A stretch of 64,000 bases of DNA from Vitrella brassicaformis CCMP3155 (taxonomy: Eukaryota > Protista > Chromerida). Positions 9,805-56,863 of the stretch are shown in pieces (the stretch's first letter is position 1; each line of letters begins with the position of its first letter). Both the position numbers and the translations under genes were made by a program. The stretch spans positions 124,001 to 188,000 of the forward strand of contig CDMY01000098.1 of the NCBI GenBank assembly GCA_001179505.1, in the 5' to 3' direction. Below the pieces are notes generated by a model, which saw only the letters and a program-made list of their open reading frames with translations, was not told where the DNA came from and did not search any database.

Positions 9805-11554
9805 TCACGCCTCGTGTGTCTGCTTCCCCCCTCCGCTGCCATTATTCCCGCCACCCTGTGGCCCTCTCCGGTTGTTCCCCCCGCCCCCGCTCCTCTTCTT
9901 CCTCGATGCCGGCGGTGTTGACGGTGGTGGCTTCTTCTTGCCCCTGGCGGGGCCCCCGATGCCTTCTCGCTCGCCGCCGCCCTTGCTGGGGTCCACCTCC
10001 AGCACATTGGACGACCGGATGCGCCGGCCGGTCTGTGTTGCAACACACACACACAGAGGGAGGGAGAGGGCGTGCAGTGAGTGCATTTGGTCAAAGGGTG
10101 TGTGGTGAGGGTGTTAAGATGGATGGTTACCTTGTCGACGGCCACGACCCTGAAGAACTGTTTCTTGTCTCCCACGACGGGCAGGTGGTGCTCAAACATG
10201 CTCTTTGGGTGCCTGTTCAGCAGCTCGGTGGGCGGGTGGGTCGGGCCGAAGTACACCTCCCACTCAGTCACCTACACACACACATCCACACCCACACCCA
10301 CAGACATCTCTCTCTCTCTCTCTCTGTGCGTGTGTGTGTGTGTGTGTGTCTCCGGTGTGGTGAAGGTAAGGTACGTTGGTTGCCCCATTCCAGGAGTAGT
10401 GTACGCTGCCCAGGGATCTGCCCGAGGGCGGCTTGTAAACCAGCTCAGGGCGTGTCCGCGGCTGCCCCCACCACTGCTGTCGGTAGCTGCGGTAGCTGCC
10501 GCCCCGGGAGAACTGAAGCTCACACACCTTCTCGCCCTTGTCCGTCACCTGCCATGCCAACACATATCGATTGCATAGCGCATCACATGCACATGTGGCC
10601 GGCCATGTGTGTGTGTGGATGGATGGATGGTATGGTGGGTGGGTACCTCAGTGTAGAATGGCATAGGTGGGGAGCCGAGGCCGCCCCAGTCAATGGCCCA
10701 GTTGCCATTGTCGAGCTTCTGCGCGTTGCCCGTCGCGAAGCCAAAGTAGTCGGGGTCGTGCCGGTACTCCCACACCTTCTTGGCAGTCAGCTTATCCTGT
10801 ACACACACACACACACAGAGACACTGCTCGCCTGTTTATTTGTTTGTGTGCATGGCTCTCTCTCTGCTGCTGTGGGCCTGTGGTTGTGAGTGCGTGTGTG
10901 TGTGCACCTCACCTGGTCAATTTCGTATTCGACGGCTCGCGAATATCTCGGCGAAAACTCGTTGCCATTGTCAAACATCGTGAGGCCTTTGCGGCCCGCA
11001 CACAGAGATGTGTCGTGTGTTGTATGGGTGGGCGTGGGTGTGTTGGTTGGCTTACTTTTGTCTGATCTGAGCCGTACGTCGTGCTGGTGTGTGAATCCCC
11101 GGTCTTTGTTGAGGTACTTGAACTGGTTCCAGGGCTCCTCGCTGCCGAACCGCCACAGCACCTCGCCGGTGTCACGCGACACCTGCCCATGCACAACACA
11201 GATGCACACACACGGGAAACACTTGATGGCCACTCTNNNNNNNNNNNNNNNNNNNNNNNNNNNNNNNNNNNNNNNNNNNNNNNNNNNNNNNNNNNNNNNN
11301 NNNNNNNNNNNNNNNNNNNNNNNNNNNNNNNNNNNNNNNNNNNNNNNNNNNNNNNNNNNNNNNNNNNNNNNNNNNNNNNNNNNNNNNNNNNNNNNNNNNN
11401 NNNNNNNNNNNNNNNNNNNNNNNNNNNNNNNNNNNNNNNNNNNNNNNNNNNNNNNNNNNNNNNNNNNNNNNNNNNNNNNNNNNNNNNNNNNNNNNNNNNN
11501 NNNNNNNNNNNNNNNNNNNNNNNNNNNNNNNNNNNNCCCCCCCCCCCCCCTCCC

Positions 11555-23184: not shown

Positions 23185-24990
23185 ATGGCGGTGAGGCACC
23201 AGACAAGGCACCAGATGTCAATCTCACTGTCGAAGCAACAGATTTTGACAACAGGGTGGGCAGAAACGAAGAAATAGATGGATGGATGGATGGATTTGTG
23301 GATGGTGCGTCCCTGTGTGATGATATCTCCCTCAGAGCTATCAGATGCAGGTGCAAGGGACACTCACTCACTTTGCCACGCATGATGCAAACAAGGTTGG
23401 TCGGTCGCTGTCTTGCCCTGGTCTGACAGAGTCGAGGCCCTTTGCACACTTATAGGCGACGCACAGACAGAGGAGCACGCCGATAGTGTCACACACATAT
23501 ATGTGTGTGGTCCTAAGCAGGTTGAGCGCTGCTGTTCCTCGGCGGCCGGCACCTGCAGAGGGCCATGGAGCTGTCCCAACAGACATGGGCGCCGAGCGTG
23601 TGTATGAGAATGGACTTGAGGGTGAGGGTGAGGGCATGTCCGGTGACGAGGAGGGCTATCGCACCCACCAGCAGCATCTGGTTCAATCACGCACGCAACA
23701 CGACACGCGATCGATATGTGGGCAATTGTGTGTGTGTGTGTGTGTGTGTGTGTAGAATGTGGGTGACGCCACTGACATGCAGGAGGGCACGCCACGCCTC
23801 GTCCAGCCACGGCAGGAGCAGTACATCAAGAAGGAGAACGGCGCAGCTGTCAAGCACACCGAGGCGCACGTACAGCAAGTACTGCAGCACAACCGCCATC
23901 GATGGACGACTTTGACCCAGCGACAAACGATGCAAATTGCCTTGCGGTGGACATGTACATTCGTCAAAGGGAGCTTGAAATGGCGCCGAAGGCACTCCTC
24001 GTCCTGCTGTCGTCCATGCGCGTGGGTCCCCCCCCCCCCCCCCCCCCCCCCCCCNNNNNNNNNNNNNNNNNNNNNNNNNNNNNNNNNNNNNNNNNNNNNN
24101 NNNNNNNNNNNNNNNNNNNNNNNNNNNNNNNNNNNNNNNNNNNNNNNNNNNNNNNNNNNNNNNNNNNNNNNNNNNNNNNNNNNNNNNNNNNNNNNNNNNN
24201 NNNNNNNNNNNNNNNNNNNNNNNNNNNNNNNNNNNNNNNNNNNNNNNNNNNNNNNNNNNNNNNNNNNNNNNNNNNNNNNNNNNNNNNNNNNNNNNNNNNN
24301 NNNNNNNNNNNNNNNNNNNNNNNNNNNNNNNNNNNNNNNNNNNNNNNNNNNNNNGGCCCCCCCCCCCCCCCGGCCGCATCGTGCGGCTCCCCCGACAACT
24401 CTGGAATATGACGATACGCATACTGCCTTGGAGGGCGCGCCTCTGCGATCTTCGCAGGTTCTTGGGATTATGGTGGGAGTGGGCGTGCACCCAGGACTAC
24501 ATCGGGCAAGACATACGAGTTCTGGAGGTTGCGACGTGCAGCGTGATCGGCGTCCCCAGGTGCGCAAAAGGGGCATCCCAACGTCCCCACCAAAGCGTGT
24601 GTGTGGTCTCTGTCTGTCTGCCCTTCAGTGAGGACGAGATGGATGAACCCCTGCTGTCGGCAGAACAGTAGATTCTACTCACAAGCTCCAATTTCCAGAT
24701 GCTTCTTTCCTCTGCTTTTTCTTCTCTTCTTCGCAGCCACAGCGACTTTGTTCTGCTTCTTGGCTGTTCTTCCTTGTCGAGTGTGACGCCCACGGCCCCG
24801 TCAGCCGCAGCAAAAGCCGCAGGCCGGCAGCCACCGACGGGACGATGAAGGAGCTCACGAGCTTCATAGGCAAGTGAGTAGCCGCACAGACAAGTTGAGT
24901 GAGACAGGCGTTGGACGCGCACATTTGATCCTCACACACACACACACACACACATTCAAATTGCCGCATTGGTCGGTCTCATCGCTGTCC

Positions 24991-30278: not shown

Positions 30279-31638
30279 TGGTTGTGCTGTGTGCTGTGCT
30301 GTGCTGTGCTGTGTTTGCCTTTGCGTCTTGCATCTGTTGGATGGGCACGTAGGGCACCAGCCCCGATGCGATCTGACGCGGCTTCTCCTCGCCTATGTCA
30401 ATCTCCTCGCAGTAAAGCCTACACGCGTAGCGACACTCATGTGCACACGCGTGGCGTGGTGTGATTGCCTTCCTGTGTGTGTGTGTGTGGGTGTCTGTCT
30501 GTGCGCTGCGCTCACTTGTCTGCCTCCGGGTGCTGCCAGACTTTGGTGATCTTCCCAACGCGCACATCGAGTCGCGTCACGTCCTCAACCGGCCGCTCGG
30601 GAGCTGTCACGTCACGAGCACACCGTCACGTCACACGCAATCCAATCAAAACACACAGACACCGACCGATACAGCAGGCGCATAGCATCACGGACGCAGC
30701 ACAAGGTGGATGGGTGGACAGACAGTCGGATGTGCTACCTTTGTTGTCGGCCCTCTGTTTCTTCTTATCCTCTTTGGCGGCCTTCTTGGCCTTAACACAC
30801 ACACACACACACACACACACACGGCGTGACACACAGGAGAATGGACCAGATGAGATGCGCTCACTCACCTTGGCTTTGTCCTGGTCCGCCACGCCATTGA
30901 CCATCGCGTCTTTGCTCTTGTCCGCACCAGCAGCTGCATTAGCATTGGCCGATCCAGCAGCAGCAGGCACCTTCCTGACACACAAACGGACAGACAGCAC
31001 CTTCCTTCTTGTCCAGCACAAGGCTCACTTACGGGGTCGGTGTGGATGTCGACAGAGGTGAGGTGGCCGACTGCCTTGGATATGCCGGGCAGGTGCTGGA
31101 TGTGGTCGAACCACCGCGTCACATTGCAGTGCGCCAAGCGCTCCTCGGCACTTGCACCCACCTGAATGAACCACATCCATCCAACCTGCCGCAGAGATAG
31201 GCATGTGTGACTGTGTGTGTGTACCATACCATCCACTGGTGGACAGCGGGGTAGGTGGCGAGGTCTGCGAGTGTGACGTTGTCGGCCGCCATGAAGGGAT
31301 ACACCCCCTGCCAAAGGTGTAGACTCTGTATCCCGGCCATGATGTGTGTCCACTTCATGGAGAGAATCCTCCACGAAGTGTGTTCAAGTTTGCAACCGAC
31401 GTAAATGCACAGAGCCAAGTGTGTTGTTCCGCGTCTGCAAATGGCCATTCAGCGTCTGATACACACACCCACACCCACACACCCACACACACAAGAGAGA
31501 GAGAGAGGTGTTAGTACTGTCTGACGAGATACGTCTTTCTTTCGTGTGTTATGTTTATATCATCATGGCGGCTGCATCAGGGACGGCATAGTCCCGCTGG
31601 GCAAGGAAGGACAACCACTGGTCGATCTCTGCCTGCAT
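29561..31638 (-). CDS. Arc1p/AIMP1(p43)-like tRNA-binding aaRS cofactor (GST_C-like domain + EMAP II-like OB fold)
   Basis: AEIDQWLSF, TLADLATYPAVHQWM and NVTRWFDHIQHLP (GST_C-like); Lys/Ala linker; RLDVRVGKI..HPEADK|LYCEEIDIGEEKPRQIASGL..|VVVLCNLKAKNLKGFPSHGM|VLCAS..PPPEAK..GTIS* (EMAP II-like). The start codon and two 5' junctions are uncertain. Confidence 0.92.
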
Positions 31639-46860: not shown

Positions 46861-48224
46861 GGGGGGNNNNNNNNNNNNNNNNNNNNNNNNNNNNNNNNNN
46901 NNNNNNNNNNNNNNNNNNNNNNNNNNNNNNNNNNNNNNNNNNNNNNNNNNNNNNNNNNNNNNNNNNNNNNNNNNNNNNNNNNNNNNNNNNNNNNNNNNNN
47001 NNNNNNNNNNNNNNNNNNNNNNNNNNNNNNNNNNNNNNNNNNNNNNNNNNNNNNNNNNNNNNNNNNNNNNNNNNNNNNNNNNNNNNNNNNNNNNNNNNNN
47101 NNNNNNNNNNNNNNNNNNNNNNNNNNNNNNNNNNNNNNNNNNNNNNNNNNNNNNNNNNNNNNNNNNGGGGGGGGAGGGCACGCACCACTGCTCTCCACCA
47201 GGTCTTGAAGAGGCCCTTCTGGTTATAGGGCTTCACAGACACGTCCAGCTGGTTCTTGTAGTAGCAGTCAGCACAGCTGACACACACACAGAGATGGATT
47301 CAGGCTCCATCCATCCAGGCATGGCTCAGCTTAGCTTGGTGTGGCTTACGCATTGTTGACGAAGAGTCTGAGCACTTTGCCTTTGGGCGGGTACTCCTTC
47401 TTGTTGGGGCCGGGCACGCCGCCCTTGGGATTCGTGTGCGTCGCTATCGCCTGCACACACACATGACATGGATGGATGGGATGGGGTGCATGCCATGCCG
47501 TGCTGTCACCACACAAACAAAACAACCAAAGGGACACAGGCATGCACCTCACTCAACTCAACTCACCTCGATACACATGCCGCAAGTCTTGCCCTGGAGT
47601 GTCAGCCAACACACACACACACACGGCCGTGGATGAGATGGATTTTGCTGCCGGCAAGCCAAAGCCGAAGCCATGTGCCCGTCTATCCTCTCTCCCTCTT
47701 ACGTTGGCGAATGTGTTGCCGCCGACGTTGGGCAGGGCCACGGAGCCCCACACGCCGTTCTTCCCCGAAGGGGGCTGATGAATGAACGGATGGACGCAAT
47801 GCATGCATGCCAGCGAATGACAACGGGGTGGTCTCTTCAAAGCTTTGTCCGGATCTCTCTCTCTCGTGTGCCCTTTGATGCACCGGTGTGTACCTCAGGG
47901 AACATATGACAAGTCCCACGGGCATCTGAACACACGGAGGCATTGAACACAACACACATCCCCCACAGAAAGATGGGCGTTGTCCATCCATCCATCCGTC
48001 CATCCATACGCACTTTTGGTGAGGGGGTGGTAGTGGCTGATGCTGCCCAGTCTCACCCCCTTGTACAGCGACTTGGCCTTCTGAACGTCCTTCTGCCCCT
48101 CAACTGCCCACACACCACACACCGTCAGCCGAAGCCCTTTCTGCCCTTTTCTCGCCACTCCCATGTGTTATTTCTCACCGAGGGAGCCGATGAAGGCCAC
48201 TGTTACCAGGATAGAGAGCCCCAT
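45557..48224 (-). CDS. Secreted Lys-rich expansin-like protein (DPBB + CBM63-like D2) with C-terminal trefoil (P-type) domain
   Basis: Signal MGLSILVTVAFIGSLVEG; GSVALPNVGGNTFAN|GKTCGMCIE, LFVNNA|CADC..QLDVS, WWRAV|DCNPG..VQIIFDDASS.HYIGVQPRN; C-terminal TCKNVPVKKKKRCGNKGTGQFACK|LLKCCYSAKGKGPKCY. Junction phases are consistent. Confidence 0.8.
46867..47166. other. Assembly gap (300 N) flanked by poly-G inside an expansin intron
   Basis: Run of N between G homopolymers; the flanking exons join in phase (WWRAV|DCNPG). Confidence 0.98.
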
Positions 48225-51637: not shown

Positions 51638-54600
51638 ATGGTCTATTCATCGGTCTTCTTCATCGCCCTCTTTTTCTCGGCTGCGGGATCTTCACTCCTT
51701 GAACGCATTCTGCAGCCTCTCAATGAGACGGATCCATCCAGTGCCACCGAGCTGTGTCCACTCGGGTACAGACGAGTGGATTCCGAGTGTGAGCCTTGCG
51801 CGCGAGGTATGGCACACAGACAGACACAGCACCAGACAGGGCACACATCAGCGCACGTGGCATGCGTGTCCGTGCAGGGTCGTTCAAGAGCGAGCTCGGA
51901 CCGGGCCCCTGCACTCCCTGCCGCAATGAGAAATTCACTTCCCTTCCCGGCTCAGTTTCGGAGGCAGACTGCTTCTGCAATCCAGGATACATCACGTACG
52001 CAATCCAGCTTCCCCCTCCCCCGTCTATGCAGACACACCTCTCTCTTCCTCTGTGCAGGAATCGCAACGACAGTCAGTGCTACGAGTGTGAAGGGGGTCT
52101 CGACTGCTCGGAGCCCTTCCCGTTCCACCCCCGCGTGGAGCCTGGCTACTACCAGCTTGAGGTCACTCTCTCCATCCTTCCTGAACACGTCCATCAAGAT
52201 GAGCATGAGCAGGATCGCGATGTGAGGACGCAGCGATGGGAGTGGAATGCTAGCCATTACATTGCGCTGCCGAAGCTCGCTGAACTAGGAAGGCCGGTCG
52301 GCAACGATACCTACACACGAAAAATGACCTCGTAAGCACACGACGCCAAAAGCGCAGCTAACAGGACAGCCACGGGAGTGGAGGGCAGTCACTTGTGGCG
52401 TCATGTGTGTGCCGACATATATAGGTATGATGCGGGTATCACGGCGTTGCCCGTTGTTGTGGAGTGTCTTGCGCGCGATGCCTGTCTGGGGACCGATCCT
52501 GACACAGGACTCAATTTGTGCAAGGTAGGTATGGTAGGTATGGGTATGTCGAGCGATGCCTACACGTGTTGCTGTTGGTTGGTGTGTATGCGTGCGCTGC
52601 AGAAGGGTCAGCATGGTTTTCTGTGCGGTGCCTGTGAGGGTCACTATACGCGTACAAGCCCATTCTATTCATGCGCCACGTGCAACACTTATGCTCAGAG
52701 CATGGCCGCAATAGTCGTCGCGAACTTCGTGGCCCTCGGCTTCATATTCGGCTTGACGTTTCTCTCGCAACGGTGAGATGAATGAGTGGCAGGCTGTGTG
52801 CGTGAAGCGAGCCCTTTCCGTGTAGCACTGCTGCGCTCCCCCGTGCGCGCATTCACTCGATGCTAATCAAGATGGGACTCGTTCATCTTACAGCGGTACA
52901 AGGAGAAAATGGCGAAACACATGAGTCTCTCCCTTTTGTGTCATTCTCTGCCTTTACTCAGATGAATTGCCTGGCACAATTCGGAATCTACACTGCCGAT
53001 ATACAGTGGCCCACATGGGCGGCAGCCACGCTCGCAAATCTGTTTACATGGGACGGGGGCCTGCCGGCAGCGTACGGCGACTGGGAGTGCCTCTTTCGAC
53101 CTCGCTTTGGTGAAAATGCCTTGCTATGGCGGCACGCATTATGGGTCATCTGGCCGGCAGTCTGGCTACTCGCTGTTACCATGACAGGTTTGTGGACATA
53201 TCACAGACAATGCGTGAAGTACAAGTGGACAGCGCCCTTTGTGTACCTAATGTGTGTATCGCAGGGGGCATTGGTATTCTTGTTCGTTACTGTCTGTTGC
53301 TGCTGCCGACTTGGCGTGGCAAACATTCATCGTACAGGTAAGAATATGTGAGCATGAGTGCGCATGAGATACAGTGTATACAGTGTATATAATCATGTGA
53401 CGAACGGTATTCTATCCGTCTCTCCCTTTGCACCTGATCGGTGGAAGCGCTACTACAACCGCTACCACTCCAAAGTGTCCCTCCATCCACAAGGACAAGC
53501 AAGGGCATGAATCAGCTGCTGACCATCGTCGATATGAGTCCAAGCCATCGGTATCGACGGCCCCATCCCTGTCCAAAAGTGAGAATGTCCCTTCGAGCAG
53601 CGACCAACCGCTCCTCAACCGCAGCACAGATAACGCAGTGAATAGCGGGATGGACAAAGATGGCAATATAGTGGTGGCTCTTTCGATGCCTCACGAGGAG
53701 ACAAAGAGGAGAGCAGTGCGCACAATTGGAGCGCTAGGCATATTCCAGGTACTACTACAATGGCTGCCCATTCGTTGAACGAATCATTTTATGCAGATAA
53801 GTGCTAATATGGGTTTGTGGCGCTCGATATTTTTGTTCCTGGGACAATGTTGGCTCTTGTGGATTGTCACGTGGACATTCGCACACCCCAGTATGTATGA
53901 AGTCGATGCACATAGACGATTGAAAGCGATCTCCTTGTCTGCATTGTGTTTCTTAGCTGTTACAAGGAACACTCTTGAATTACTACGGTGAGGGACTATG
54001 CGTTGGACTGTACCTTTCTTGTGCATATTTTGTGTTGTCTCCTGTAGATGTCATACGGCTCCGTGGCTGAAGCCCGAATATACGACCAACACAAAATACG
54101 TCGCCATGGACGTTCTTGCTTTCGCAAAGCGAAGACTTGCCATCAATCCCAATATCATCTGTTTGTAAGGATCACTTCATCACACTCATCACGTGGCTCG
54201 GCTAGCTATTGTCTCTCTTTAATGCATGTCTTACAGCGAGAAAGAGCATAAGCTTTTTGGGCTTGTTGGTCTTGTGGGATTTCTTGGTTGGTCCGTTTTT
54301 CCGGTGTTTGTACTAATAACGGTTCTGTGCCGAGAACGATCGCGTTTCCGATTGCCGGAAACCAGACAACGATTCGGCTTTCTGTACAATGTAAGATGAC
54401 GGCGTGTGACGGCGTATGTGTATGCACTCAGTATTCTAGAGACTCCTTTTCTTTGTCTCTCTGTGTGTGTGCCAGGGGTAAGGGATAAATCTATATTTCG
54501 GACGCCACATGATTTTAATCTTTCTTCTCCCTTTAGCTACCGTCCCGGCTTCTTTTTCTGGGATGCAGCTTATGCGCTGCACCGAGTGGCGGTCTTATTG

Positions 54601-56863
54601 ATAGCGCAGACGGTGGTAGGTGATCCCTCCTTTCAGCTGCTGGCGTGGGCTGTGGTGGCCATCGGTTCACTCATTGTCCAGCTCACCGTGCGCCCCTTCG
54701 ATCATCGCAAGTTGAACATCCTCAATCGAATGGAAGAGCAGGGGTAAGTGCATGTGATGCGGCGGACTTCTCTTACAGCTCTCATGTGTCATCGATTGGT
54801 TGCTCTGTTTTGTTCCAGTCTGGTTATATGGACAGCATCTATTGTTCTGATGGAAGTGGTCGTCATCATTAATTGGAGCCGCACACTCAACGCCCTCATA
54901 GTCATTATTGTGGCCGCACTCAACATTGTCCACTACATCAACATACTTTTGCTTGTTGTCCCTCAATTCCGACGCTCACTGGTATATGCGGCATACCAGT
55001 ATGCTTACGGTGGTAAGACAGGAGATCTGATGAAGAAAAAGGAGATGCATCAAGATGTGTCTATCGCATGCATGCGTGTAGCCGTTGATGGCGTTCTCTG
55101 CTGTCGTGCTGGCATTATTTACCTACTGTTGAAGTGGCCGTGGACGTATCTAATTGGCAGAGACGCGAAGTGTCGCGAAGGTGTGCCGAGGGTGTTTATC
55201 AACTATACCACCGGATACCTTGACCTCCGCCAGGGCCGCAACAGAATGAACACACGCACGTAATACCATACGTAGAGACAGAGATCCGCTACACAAACAC
55301 TCGGATGCCTACCTTATATTACTCTTTTCACTTTTGTGGTAGAATATCGTGTTGCCCTCTGAGCGTTGAGGCGATGCTGAAGAGTCTCTCACTAGGCGGC
55401 AGGGCCGCTGAAGTGGGAGTAGGAGTAGGAGTCATGCGGATGACTGCACATGCCATGCAGGATGCCATTGAGCTACTGCAGATACACGAAATACCCCCAG
55501 GTAGGTATGGAGGGTAGAAAATCGAAGGAAGCTAGGTTTCTTCTTTCTCTGGCTGTAGATCTGTCAGAGTTCTTTTGGAGCCAGGCTTTTTTGTTCCACG
55601 CATTGCGTATGAAAATCGTGAAGGACCGAGAGGACCCTACAAGTGAGTGAGCTAGAATACGCAAGTAAAAGGGTGAGAGTCATCTCTTCTGTTTACAGAG
55701 GACCGAATGATTGTCATGCCACACCCTATCGAGGACAGCAAACAAGTAACGGACTTCCACAGACACGAAGAAGCCCACGCAAGTGACCAAATGTATCTCA
55801 CGTGTTTCGCTTTTCTATAGGGTTTCCGTCAGATGAGCATTGAAGAGACGTCTCAGGCGATGAAAGAGGAGGCGGTCAAACAGGCCTCTCTGCTCCTCCA
55901 GGTCAAGGCAGCCAAGGCAGCAGAGAGCCATGGAGAACGCTCATTGCACAATGCCGGCCGAATTGTATCTCCCGTCGACCTCCCCGATGGATCGACGGAC
56001 AGCACAGCCTACCAGGCGGCAGCCGAAGGGCAGTGCAGAACAAGGTCAGGCATGGGCTTGAAACAACGCATGTCAGTTGTTGGTTATCTGCATGTATGAA
56101 CAATGGTAGGCCCATTATTGTTGGCGTCCCGCTTGATGACTTCGAGGCAAGCAAACAGAATGAGGCGCCTCTTAGGGATGAATGGCTCCTTGCCTTCTTC
56201 CCTTTTAGTTGAATCTATCTTATGTGGTTGACGAGCTCGTCACTCGGCAGCAGCAGCACGAGGAGACACTGCGGGGCCAAAGATTGCTCGCCACGACGGA
56301 GGGGGTCGCCAGAGAAGACGATGGGAAGCCGGGCGGCTGGATGGGCCTCTACTTGGCCTTCAGACAGGCCAAACAGAAACTGATCCAAACTGGAACTGAC
56401 CCGGTGATAGACACACAATGCGATCGCGTTGAAAGACCGATGCACTCTTGTCATCTGTTCGTCTTCTCTTGGCGTGTAGGAGGATGTGCCTGCTGCATTG
56501 GCCACTTATGCGTCTCAGAAGGACTACATCCCCCTCTCCTCCCCTCATGACGTGTCCCAGCCTCGACCATCGGCCTCCAACGCCAGCATCACATCTGAGG
56601 GCTCGCCATCGATGCCCCGCTGCTCGTCTCCCTCGATGCAACACCACCCCTTCTCCAGCATGCGACTGCAGGCCATCCCTCAGCCATCTGACGATATTGG
56701 ATCGGGCCGGCAGAGAGGCAGCCCTCCGAGAACATCCAGCAGTATGTTCGAGTCGAGGGACTTTAAGAATTTCGCAGAGGCCGTCTATCGCGACATCGCA
56801 GGGCCCGTTACGATCCGCAGGACGATAAGGCGAAGCAAGAGCAAGCCGAACTGGGGTGACTGA
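51638..56863 (+). CDS. Cys-rich (GCC2_GCC3/ephrin-receptor-like) ectodomain + multi-pass membrane protein with long C-terminal tail
   Basis: Signal MVYSSVFFIALFFSAAG; CPLGY..CEPCARG|SFK..CTPC..TSLPGS..DCFCNPGY; CGACEGHY; TM block (QMNCLAQF, WPTW, RFGFLYNGYRPGFFFWD, LIVQLTVRPF..LNRME). One acceptor near 53420 is unresolved. Confidence 0.8.

What the first reader, a model, noticed from the sequence alone, without database searches (positions are those of the whole stretch)
54391..54536. A 2-nucleotide micro-exon (GG at 54476-54477) completes RFGFLYN-G-Y
Seen: the exon ends ..ttc ggc ttt ctg tac aat|GTAAGA (phase 0) while the next exon CTTTAG|c tac cgt needs phase 2. Between them lies gtgtgtgtgcCAG|GG|GTAAGG, a strong acceptor and a strong donor 2 nt apart, giving introns of 85 and 59 nt and the in-frame reading YN-G(gg+c)-YRPGFFFWD. 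Established: exons of 3 nt or less are very rare and usually missed by annotators. It could also reflect a recursive or sequential splicing intermediate.
Basis: seen in the sequence. Interest (0 to 1): 0.75.

Follow-up and report, generated by a model that had tools for sequence, protein, structure and literature searches.

The report
Two-nucleotide exon in a Vitrella gene
A membrane-receptor gene of the alga Vitrella brassicaformis almost certainly needs a two-base exon (GG) between two short introns to stay in frame, which is rare but already known in plants and fungi, and no transcript has yet confirmed it here.

Summary
Exon E4 ends ...RFGFLYN|GTAAGA in phase 0. CAG|GG|GTAAGG lies at 54473-54483. 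The acceptor CTTTAG|C TAC CGT opens exon E5 in phase 2.

The genome is Vitrella brassicaformis CCMP3155. The gene belongs to a family of 40 or more paralogs (LRR repeats, ephrin-receptor-like repeats, a multi-pass membrane region).

- **Paralogs.** Those without an intron here read GFLY-x-G-YR contiguously. The closest paralog has one phase-0 intron followed by GGA TAC. So exactly one Gly codon is required, and GG+C supplies it.
- **Splice sites.** Of the 25 in-frame canonical solutions, only the GG micro-exon uses four sites that score inside the range of 119 real family introns. It is also the only one that keeps the motif.
- **Mis-splicing.** Every mis-spliced product hits an early stop.
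- **Selection.** Exons downstream of the junction are under strong purifying selection (dN/dS about 0.12).
- **Origin.** The likely origin is gain of a single-copy 59-nt intron 2 nt downstream of an older intron.

No transcript evidence and no official gene model could be obtained. Exons of 1-3 nt are documented in Arabidopsis and, in numbers, in Coprinopsis. This is therefore a new member of a known kind. The same stretch was also noted in another first-stage reading of this scan.

The parts
51868..56818 (+). Approximate extent of the host gene that could be traced: Cys-rich ectodomain, multi-pass membrane region and conserved C-terminal region.
   Evidence: tblastn of annotated paralogs P0001, P0011 and P0010. 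Colinear tblastx with the paralog on contig C295. Canonical introns at matching positions in both genes.
54165..54236 (+). Ordinary upstream intron, 72 nt, phase 2 (tt|GTAAGG...ACAG|c).
   Evidence: Sequence. The only good in-frame connection between the two anchors. Matched by an intron in the C295 paralog.
54237..54390 (+). Exon E4, 154 nt. It encodes ...EKEHKLFGLVG...ETRQRFGFLYN and ends in phase 0.
   Evidence: It is 59% identical to the C295 paralog, with pN/pS 0.40.
54391..54475 (+). Intron 1, 85 nt: GTAAGA ... TG-rich tract ... GCCAG. It sits at the phase-0 position shared with L002 and the L011 clade.
   Evidence: The donor scores 9.0 bits (73rd percentile of 119 family introns) and the acceptor 6.5 bits (21st percentile). 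The position is shared with paralogs.
54476..54477 (+). Proposed 2-nt micro-exon GG, the first two bases of a Gly codon (GG+C).
   Evidence: It is the only solution that restores GFLYNGYRPGFFFWD. The Gly and the spacing are conserved in the paralogs.
54478..54536 (+). Intron 2, 59 nt: GTAAGG ... TTAAT ... TCTTTCTTCTCCCTTTAG. It is found only in this gene among about 40 paralog loci.
   Evidence: The donor scores 5.2 bits (21st percentile; 5.5 bits once intron 1 is removed) and the acceptor 8.5 bits (44th percentile). It is single copy in the genome. Its length lies within the family range of 50-281 nt.
54515..54519 (+). Candidate branch site TTAAT of intron 2; its A lies 18 nt upstream of the 3' splice site.
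   Evidence: It is the only yUnAy match in intron 2. This is inference only: the motif is found in just 51 of 119 family introns.
54537..54743 (+). Exon E5, 207 nt. It starts with the third base (C) of the Gly codon and then encodes YRPGFFFWDAAYALHRVAVLLIAQ...NRMEEQ(G).
   Evidence: It has 44 matches in the same genome, is 68% identical to the C295 paralog with pN/pS 0.30, and gives a weak PF06011 TRP match.
54744..54818 (+). Ordinary downstream intron, 75 nt, phase 2 (gg|GTAAGT...TCCAG|t).

Best explanation
The two bases GG at 54476-54477 are a real exon that is always included in a functional Vitrella brassicaformis gene. The gene encodes a receptor-like protein with a multi-pass membrane region.

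The pre-mRNA carries two complete short spliceosomal introns, of 85 and 59 nt, separated by only these two bases. Each intron has its own donor, its own pyrimidine-rich or TG-rich 3' region and its own AG. Each is recognised as a unit across the intron (intron definition), which is the expected mode in a genome whose introns have a median length of about 70 nt.

The 3' splice site of intron 1 and the 5' splice site of intron 2 overlap physically. The two introns must therefore be removed one after the other, in either order. After one is removed, the remaining intron sees a normal long exon. The product is ...TAC AAT GGC TAC CGT..., which encodes the conserved GFLYNGYRPGFFFWD.

The arrangement most likely arose when a 59-nt intron was gained inside the Gly codon, 2 nt downstream of an older phase-0 intron.

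Shown: the sequence, the family constraint, the strength of the sites, and the lack of any equally good alternative. Inferred: inclusion of GG in the mRNA, the sequential order of removal, and origin by intron gain.
For: 1. **Family constraint.** Paralogs with no intron at this site read GFLY-x-G-YR(R/K) contiguously, with 6 nt between the two Tyr codons. Distant homologs P0015, P0017, P0019 and P0021 keep GF..xGY....F.WE with identical spacing.
2. **Closest paralog.** The paralog L002 (contig C295), 68% identical in E5, has one 83-nt phase-0 intron: tacaac|gtaggc...gtgcag|GGA TAC CGC. The window's intron 1 sits at that same position, and its acceptor is likewise followed by GG.
3. **Enumeration.** There are 6 single-intron and 19 two-intron solutions that are canonical and in frame. 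Only the GG exon gives FLYNGY. No nested (twintron-type) solution does.
4. **Site scores.** A position-weight matrix (PWM) was built from 119 exactly mapped introns of 6 annotated paralogs. All four sites score within the real range: 9.0, 6.5, 5.2 and 8.5 bits. The weakest-site score of 5.2 ranks first of the 25 solutions; the next best is 2.1.
5. **Intron lengths.** 85 and 59 nt lie within the family range of 50-281 nt, median 71.
6. **Mis-splicing.** Skipping GG or retaining either intron produces an early stop.
7. **Selection.** Against the C295 paralog, dN/dS is 0.24 upstream and 0.12 downstream of the junction. All the downstream junctions examined are canonical and in frame.
8. **Precedent within the family.** Annotated models hold exons of 13, 20, 21, 23 and 25 nt.
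9. **Precedent elsewhere.** A 1-nt exon is spliced constitutively in Arabidopsis APC11 (PMC4674806). Coprinopsis cinerea has 57 exons of 2 nt (PMC12230235).
Against: There is no transcript evidence. The annotated model of this gene and any transcript-derived fragments were sought and not recovered, and an exon-only scan of metagenome contigs found nothing.

Synonymous sites between the two paralogs are saturated. The purifying selection is therefore an average over a long period and cannot exclude recent loss of function.

The donor of intron 2 and the acceptor of intron 1 are only at about the 21st percentile of real sites.

The mRNA sequence aatGGctac would also result from a single non-canonical 144-nt intron with shifted borders. 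cDNA alone would not prove that two introns are removed.
Confidence: 0.78

Rival explanations
1. A single 153-nt intron is used, running from the upstream donor ct|GTACAA (54384) to CTTTAG (54536). The result is ...RFGFL-YRPGFFFWD, a protein that lacks three residues (YNG) of the motif.
For: This is the only single canonical GT-AG intron that joins E4 and E5 in frame without adding residues. A gene predictor that cannot model 2-nt exons would probably choose it.
Against: The donor scores 0.3 bits, which equals the weakest of 119 real donors, and it lacks the +5 G present in 96 of 119. A strong donor, GTAAGA, lies 7 nt downstream. The deletion breaks a spacing that is invariant in all paralogs and distant homologs examined. 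It also leaves the internal CAG|GG|GTAAGG unexplained.
Confidence: 0.06
2. The junction is not productively spliced. The GG is skipped, or an intron is retained, so the transcript carries a premature stop. The gene would then be a young pseudogene, or would be kept at a low level by unproductive splicing.
For: Skipping GG joins two strong sites (9.0 and 8.5 bits) and gives a stop after 28 codons. Some family members carry in-frame stops. No expression data could be obtained.
Against: All other junctions examined are canonical and in frame. The downstream exons are open and strongly constrained, with dN/dS 0.12. A complete, well-formed 59-nt intron placed exactly where GG+C restores the conserved Gly is not expected in a decaying gene.
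Confidence: 0.09
3. A 51-nt intron (54391-54441, acceptor CTAGAG) is removed and the remaining 95 nt are translated. This inserts 32 residues (TPFLCLSVCVPGVRDKSIFRTPHDFNLSSPFS) between N and Y.
For: It is in frame and free of stops. Introns of 50-51 nt exist in the family.
Against: The acceptor scores -2.3 bits, below all 119 real acceptors. No paralog or homolog has an insertion here, and the conserved Gly is lost. The inserted stretch has intron-like T-rich composition.
Confidence: 0.02
4. It is an artefact or a non-canonical event. Either the assembly has a 2-nt error at one border, or a single 144-nt intron with shifted non-GT-AG borders (for example 54392-54535) yields the same mRNA.
For: The same mRNA sequence follows from shifted borders, which can be read directly. 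The assembly is based on short reads (PMC4501334).
Against: All 119 family introns are GT-AG or GC-AG: 118 GT and 1 GC. There is no gap or N near the site. An error would not create a precisely placed acceptor-GG-donor with a full intron behind it.
Confidence: 0.04

Closest known systems
2-nt and other exons of 3 nt or less in Coprinopsis cinerea (long-read annotation, PMC12230235)
   Same: These are internal exons of 1, 2 or 3 nt (13, 57 and 27 exons respectively) between short introns. Omitting them usually creates a premature stop. The organism has short introns.
   Different: It is a fungus, and the exons are supported by full-length transcripts. The present case is a chromerid alga and rests on comparison only.
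Single-nucleotide exon of plant APC11 and VPS55 (PMC4674806, PMC8831610)
   Same: An ultra-short exon lies between two canonical introns. It is missed by annotation, is needed for the reading frame, and has relatives that lack the introns. Stepwise removal of the two introns was proposed.
   Different: The plant exon is 1 nt and ancient, conserved across land plants. The exon here is 2 nt and is seen in one gene out of a family of 40 or more members, so it is apparently young.
Recursive splice sites (ratchet points, zero-length exons) of long animal introns
   Same: A 3' splice site lies directly next to a 5' splice site, and removal is stepwise.
   Different: At a ratchet point AG|GT is juxtaposed, nothing is retained, and the site serves to remove very long introns. 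Here two bases are retained and needed, and the introns are 85 and 59 nt. This comparison rests on my own knowledge and on the discussion in PMC4674806.
Spliceosomal twin introns (stwintrons) of fungi
   Same: Two introns in intimate contact must be removed in order.
   Different: In a stwintron the inner intron interrupts a splice signal of the outer one. Here no nested solution gives the conserved protein, and the two introns are side by side.
Fungal-type TRP / Flc membrane domain (Pfam PF06011)
   Same: The membrane region around the FLYxGY motif gives sub-threshold matches in E5 and in paralogs P0001 and P0005. The E-values are 0.029, 2.6e-4 and 3.8e-5.
   Different: All scores (13.6-23.1 bits) are below the curated cut-off of 28.5 bits. 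The ectodomain (LRR, ephrin-receptor-like repeats, DUF7630) is different. Membership is not established.

Membership tests
Ultra-short micro-exon (3 nt or less) between two spliceosomal introns | An acceptor AG lies directly upstream and a donor GT directly downstream, each in a context typical of the organism. | tested here: met
   CAG|GG|GTAAGG. The acceptor scores 6.5 bits and the donor 5.2 bits, both at the 21st percentile of 119 family introns.
Ultra-short micro-exon (3 nt or less) between two spliceosomal introns | Both flanking introns are complete and of normal size for the genome. | tested here: met
   They are 85 and 59 nt, against a family range of 50-281 nt with median 71. The outer donor scores 9.0 bits and the outer acceptor 8.5 bits.
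Ultra-short micro-exon (3 nt or less) between two spliceosomal introns | Inclusion restores the reading frame and a conserved residue, and no ordinary junction does. | tested here: met
   It is the only one of 25 in-frame canonical solutions that gives GFLYNGYR. The paralogs read GFLYxGYR.
Ultra-short micro-exon (3 nt or less) between two spliceosomal introns | The bases are present in the mature mRNA. | not testable with these tools
No transcript data were reachable. Protein searches found neither the annotated model nor transcript fragments.
Recursive splice site (zero-length exon) | AG|GT are juxtaposed and no nucleotide is retained in the mRNA. | tested here: not met
   Two bases lie between AG and GT, and dropping them shifts the frame into a stop after 28 codons.
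Stwintron (nested spliceosomal introns) | Removal of an inner intron rebuilds a splice signal of an outer intron. | tested here: not met
   An exhaustive nested enumeration gave 46 in-frame solutions, none of them with FLYNGY.
Introner-type (repeat-derived) intron | Many similar copies of the intron sequence occur in the same genome. | tested here: not met
   The 83-nt and 161-nt queries covering the introns match only themselves in the 72.7-Mb genome. The tool may miss very short or diverged copies.
Pfam PF06011 TRP domain family (host protein) | The score reaches the curated gathering threshold of 28.5 bits. | tested here: not met
   The scores are 13.6 bits for E5, 20.4 for P0001 and 23.1 for P0005.

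The most novel reading that the evidence does not exclude
The locus captures a recent intron gain. A single-copy 59-nt intron was inserted 2 nt downstream of an existing acceptor, inside a Gly codon.

Among paralogs that same codon carries introns at four adjacent positions: -1, 0, +1 and +2. This would make the site a natural hot spot for intron insertion or intron sliding. It would also show that a chromerid spliceosome tolerates effectively no exon between two introns.

A further possibility is that inefficient inclusion of GG, which leads to a premature stop, serves as a built-in control on expression.
Probability: 0.3. Interest if true: 0.55.

Novelty: new member of a known kind. Interest (0 to 1): 0.38.

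Why it matters
- **Annotation.** If the GG exon is real, the gene model at this locus needs a micro-exon that standard predictors and read aligners do not place. Several family models in the public annotation are already truncated or skip small exons in this same region.
- **Range of the phenomenon.** It would extend exons of 3 nt or less from plants and fungi to the alveolates, in a close relative of the apicomplexan parasites.
- **Experimental use.** It offers a simple natural substrate for two questions: how short an exon the spliceosome can handle when introns are recognised by intron definition, and in which order two touching introns are removed.
- **Evolution.** Comparison of the paralogs gives a dated-by-context example of intron gain next to an older intron.

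Tried and rejected
- **Official gene model and transcript fragments.** The exhaustive representative search with E5 gave a best hit of only 61% identity, which is a paralog. Three word-based searches found only paralogs or nothing: the E5 open reading frame, P0001 region 1590-1720, and P0003 region 325-530. The annotated model of this gene was not recovered.
- **Metagenome scan.** An exon-only 24-nt pattern from E5 gave 0 hits in metagenome contigs.
- **Introner origin.** No other copy of either intron exists in the genome.
- **RNA structure.** Folding of intron 2 and of the whole 146 nt is no better than shuffled sequence (z = +0.76 and -0.98). Intron 1 gives z = -1.9, which is not compelling. 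The 9-nt inverted repeat at the ends of intron 2 is what donor and acceptor consensus sequences produce by themselves.
- **Internal duplication.** No tandem or segmental repeat links intron 1 and intron 2.
- **Paralog tree.** The tree built on about 100 residues is poorly resolved. It supports only the statement that L002 is the nearest relative. It was not used to date the gain.
- **Second site in the window.** The other acceptor-NN-donor site, at 31053-31062, was read. Its context suggests that the sequence there belongs to a gene on the other strand, so it was not pursued.
- All searches were exon by exon, by reference.

Full report
**What is there.**
- Exon E4 (54237-54390) ends ...cga ttc ggc ttt ctg tac aat and is followed by GTAAGA.
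- After 85 nt comes ...gtgtgtgtgcCAG (54473-54475), then GG (54476-54477), then GTAAGG (54478-54483).
- After 59 nt in all the intron ends in ...tcttctcccttTAG at 54536. Exon E5 begins c tac cgt ccc ggc ttc ttt ttc tgg gat.
- The frames of E4 and E5 are fixed by the neighbouring junctions, and both of those are ordinary. E3|E4 is tt|GTAAGG...ACAG|c, with a 72-nt intron. E5|E6 is gg|GTAAGT...CCAG|t, with a 75-nt intron.
- E4 therefore ends in phase 0 and E5 starts in phase 2, so two bases are missing.

**Organism and gene.**
- The window is contig C98 of an assembly of 72,700,666 bases in 1064 contigs.
- These figures are exactly those published for Vitrella brassicaformis CCMP3155 (PMC4501334). 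Related proteins carry that species name.
- The gene runs from about 51.87 to 56.8 kb on the + strand.
- Full-length annotated paralogs combine leucine-rich repeats, ephrin-receptor-like Cys repeats, DUF7630 and a multi-pass membrane region.
- The membrane region gives sub-threshold matches to the fungal-type TRP domain PF06011.
- The family is large: E5 alone finds 44 places in the genome.

**The family fixes what the mRNA must encode.**
- In the paralogs with no intron at this site, the two Tyr codons of GFLY-x-G-YR(R/K) are 6 nt apart. The residue before the second Tyr is Gly in nearly all of them; it is Ala in L024 and L036 and Ser in L037.
- Distant homologs found by the exhaustive search keep the same spacing. 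Examples are GFLTNGYDEGFWFWE, GFVADGYESDFFYWE and GFFFYGYRPQFFLWE.
- The closest paralog is L002 on contig C295, 68% identical in E5. It has one 83-nt intron exactly where intron 1 sits: tac aac|gtaggc...tgtgtgcag|GGA TAC CGC.
- The L011 clade of eight genes has an intron at the same phase-0 position, followed by GGA TAC.
- The window gene therefore needs N-G-Y. Its intron-1 acceptor is followed by GG, and the missing third base is the C that opens E5.

**Alternatives, enumerated.**
- I listed every GT/GC-AG solution that joins E4 to E5 in frame without a stop. There are 6 with one intron and 19 with two. I also listed every nested, twintron-like solution; there are 46.
- Only 54391-54475 plus 54478-54536 yields GFLYNGYRPGFFFWD.
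- To judge the sites independently of homology, I threaded six annotated paralog proteins exactly onto their loci. This recovered 119 introns: 118 GT-AG and 1 GC-AG, 50-281 nt long, median 71.
- A weight matrix built from these introns scores the four sites at 9.0, 6.5, 5.2 and 8.5 bits, which are the 73rd, 21st, 21st and 44th percentiles of real sites.
- Ranked by their weakest site, the GG solution comes first of the 25 at 5.2 bits. The next best scores 2.1.
- Two rivals would tempt a gene predictor.
  - A 153-nt intron from ct|GTACAA uses a donor that scores 0.3 bits, lacks the +5 G and deletes YNG.
  - A 51-nt intron ending CTAGAG uses an acceptor that scores -2.3 bits, worse than any real one, and inserts 32 residues.
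- Skipping GG, or retaining either intron, leads to an early stop.

**Is the gene alive?**
- Against the C295 paralog the exons are colinear over 5 kb. Introns lie at matching positions almost throughout.
- Synonymous sites are saturated (pS about 0.6-0.67), while pN is 0.17-0.24. This gives dN/dS of about 0.24 upstream and 0.12 downstream of the junction.
- This shows long-term constraint on the downstream frame. It cannot exclude a recent failure.

**Origin.**
- Intron 2 was found in none of the other roughly 40 paralog loci inspected. Its sequence is single copy in the genome.
- The simplest history is gain of a 59-nt intron inside the Gly codon, in the lineage of this gene.
- The C295 paralog has precisely lost at least one other ancient intron. 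This is the 53-nt intron at 52773-52825 of the window, which P0001, P0011 and P0005 share.
- So it remains possible that intron 2 predates the split from the C295 paralog and was lost there.
- Among the paralogs, introns sit at four adjacent positions around this codon:
  - AA|T GGG in L005;
  - x|GGN in the window gene, L002 and the L011 clade;
  - G|GG in L027, which corresponds to the annotated protein P0005 and has a 50-nt intron;
  - GG|C in the window gene only.

**Mechanism (inferred).**
- With introns this short, recognition is expected to work across the intron.
- The AG of intron 1 lies within the stretch that U1 would contact at the donor of intron 2, so both introns cannot be engaged at once.
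- Removing either intron first leaves an ordinary substrate. The remaining donor context becomes TGG|GTAAGG (5.5 bits) and the remaining acceptor context CAG|GGC (6.1 bits).
- The same stepwise model was proposed for the 1-nt exon of Arabidopsis APC11 (PMC4674806).

**Comparison with what is known.**
- Exons of 1 nt are experimentally validated in plants (PMC4674806; PMC8831610).
- The long-read annotation of Coprinopsis cinerea lists 13 exons of 1 nt, 57 of 2 nt and 27 of 3 nt (PMC12230235).
- I found no report of such exons in chromerids or apicomplexans, and nothing relevant under "2-nt exon" and its variants.
- Annotated Vitrella paralogs already hold exons of 13 and 20-25 nt.
- Other first-stage notes of this scan, which are unchecked, mention micro-exons of 4, 6, 9, 10 and 15 nt elsewhere in this genome.
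- This is therefore a new member of a known kind.

**Limits.**
- No transcript data were reachable, and the public model of this gene was not recovered.
- All searches were exon by exon, by reference.
- The contig is algal, not human.

**Verdict.** The micro-exon reading is the best explanation, at about 0.78. Interest is moderate to low.

Noticed in passing
window 52773-52825: This is a 53-nt phase-2 intron in the Arg codon of ...FLSQR|TAALPRARIHSML. Annotated paralogs P0001, P0011 and P0005 have an intron at the same position and phase. The closest paralog (C295) is contiguous there, which indicates a precise intron loss in that gene.
   Followed up: partly
L005:1396-1500, L002:1415-1497, L027 (minus strand, reverse-complement positions 1539-1588), window 54391-54536: Among the paralogs, introns occupy four adjacent positions (-1, 0, +1, +2) around the same Gly codon of the FLYxGY motif. 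This points to intron sliding or to repeated insertion at one proto-splice site.
   Followed up: partly
L025 and L048 (contig C508), protein P0003: In the L011 clade (eight loci) the piece GYKxxYAYW lies on a 27-nt exon and DAVFAL(R) on a 20-nt exon. The public model P0003 reads FLYQ|DAAFALR. It therefore omits the 27-nt exon, and it also omits an upstream open, conserved transmembrane exon that lies inside a 281-nt 'intron'.
   Followed up: partly
L045:5102-5114 (contig C462), protein P0010: The public model contains a 13-nt exon, GAGGGGCATGCAG, between introns of 68 and 69 nt. This shows that very small exons are already accepted in this family's annotation.
   Followed up: yes
proteins P0006, P0009, P0014, P0016 (loci L036, L018, L011, L029): Several public models of family members begin in, or just before, the FLYxGY/E5 region. 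They look like truncated models.
   Followed up: no
G000:C274:121732-121938, C481:33444-33650, C585:4631-4822: The E5-equivalent exons of three paralogs each carry an in-frame TAG. They may be pseudogenes within the family.
   Followed up: no
119 family introns (loci L042-L048): The 3' regions of the introns are TG-rich rather than purely pyrimidine-rich. TGTGT occurs in 46 of 119, and a yUnAy branch motif is found in only 51 of 119. The donor +5 G is the strongest signal after GT (96 of 119).
   Followed up: partly
window 31053-31062: This is the second place on the + strand where a good acceptor and a good donor lie 2 nt apart (CAGAGGTGAG). The surrounding sequence looks as if it belongs to a gene on the minus strand.
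   Followed up: no
window 11237-11536, 24055-24354, 46867-47166: There are three runs of exactly 300 N (scaffold gaps). None is near the finding.
   Followed up: yes
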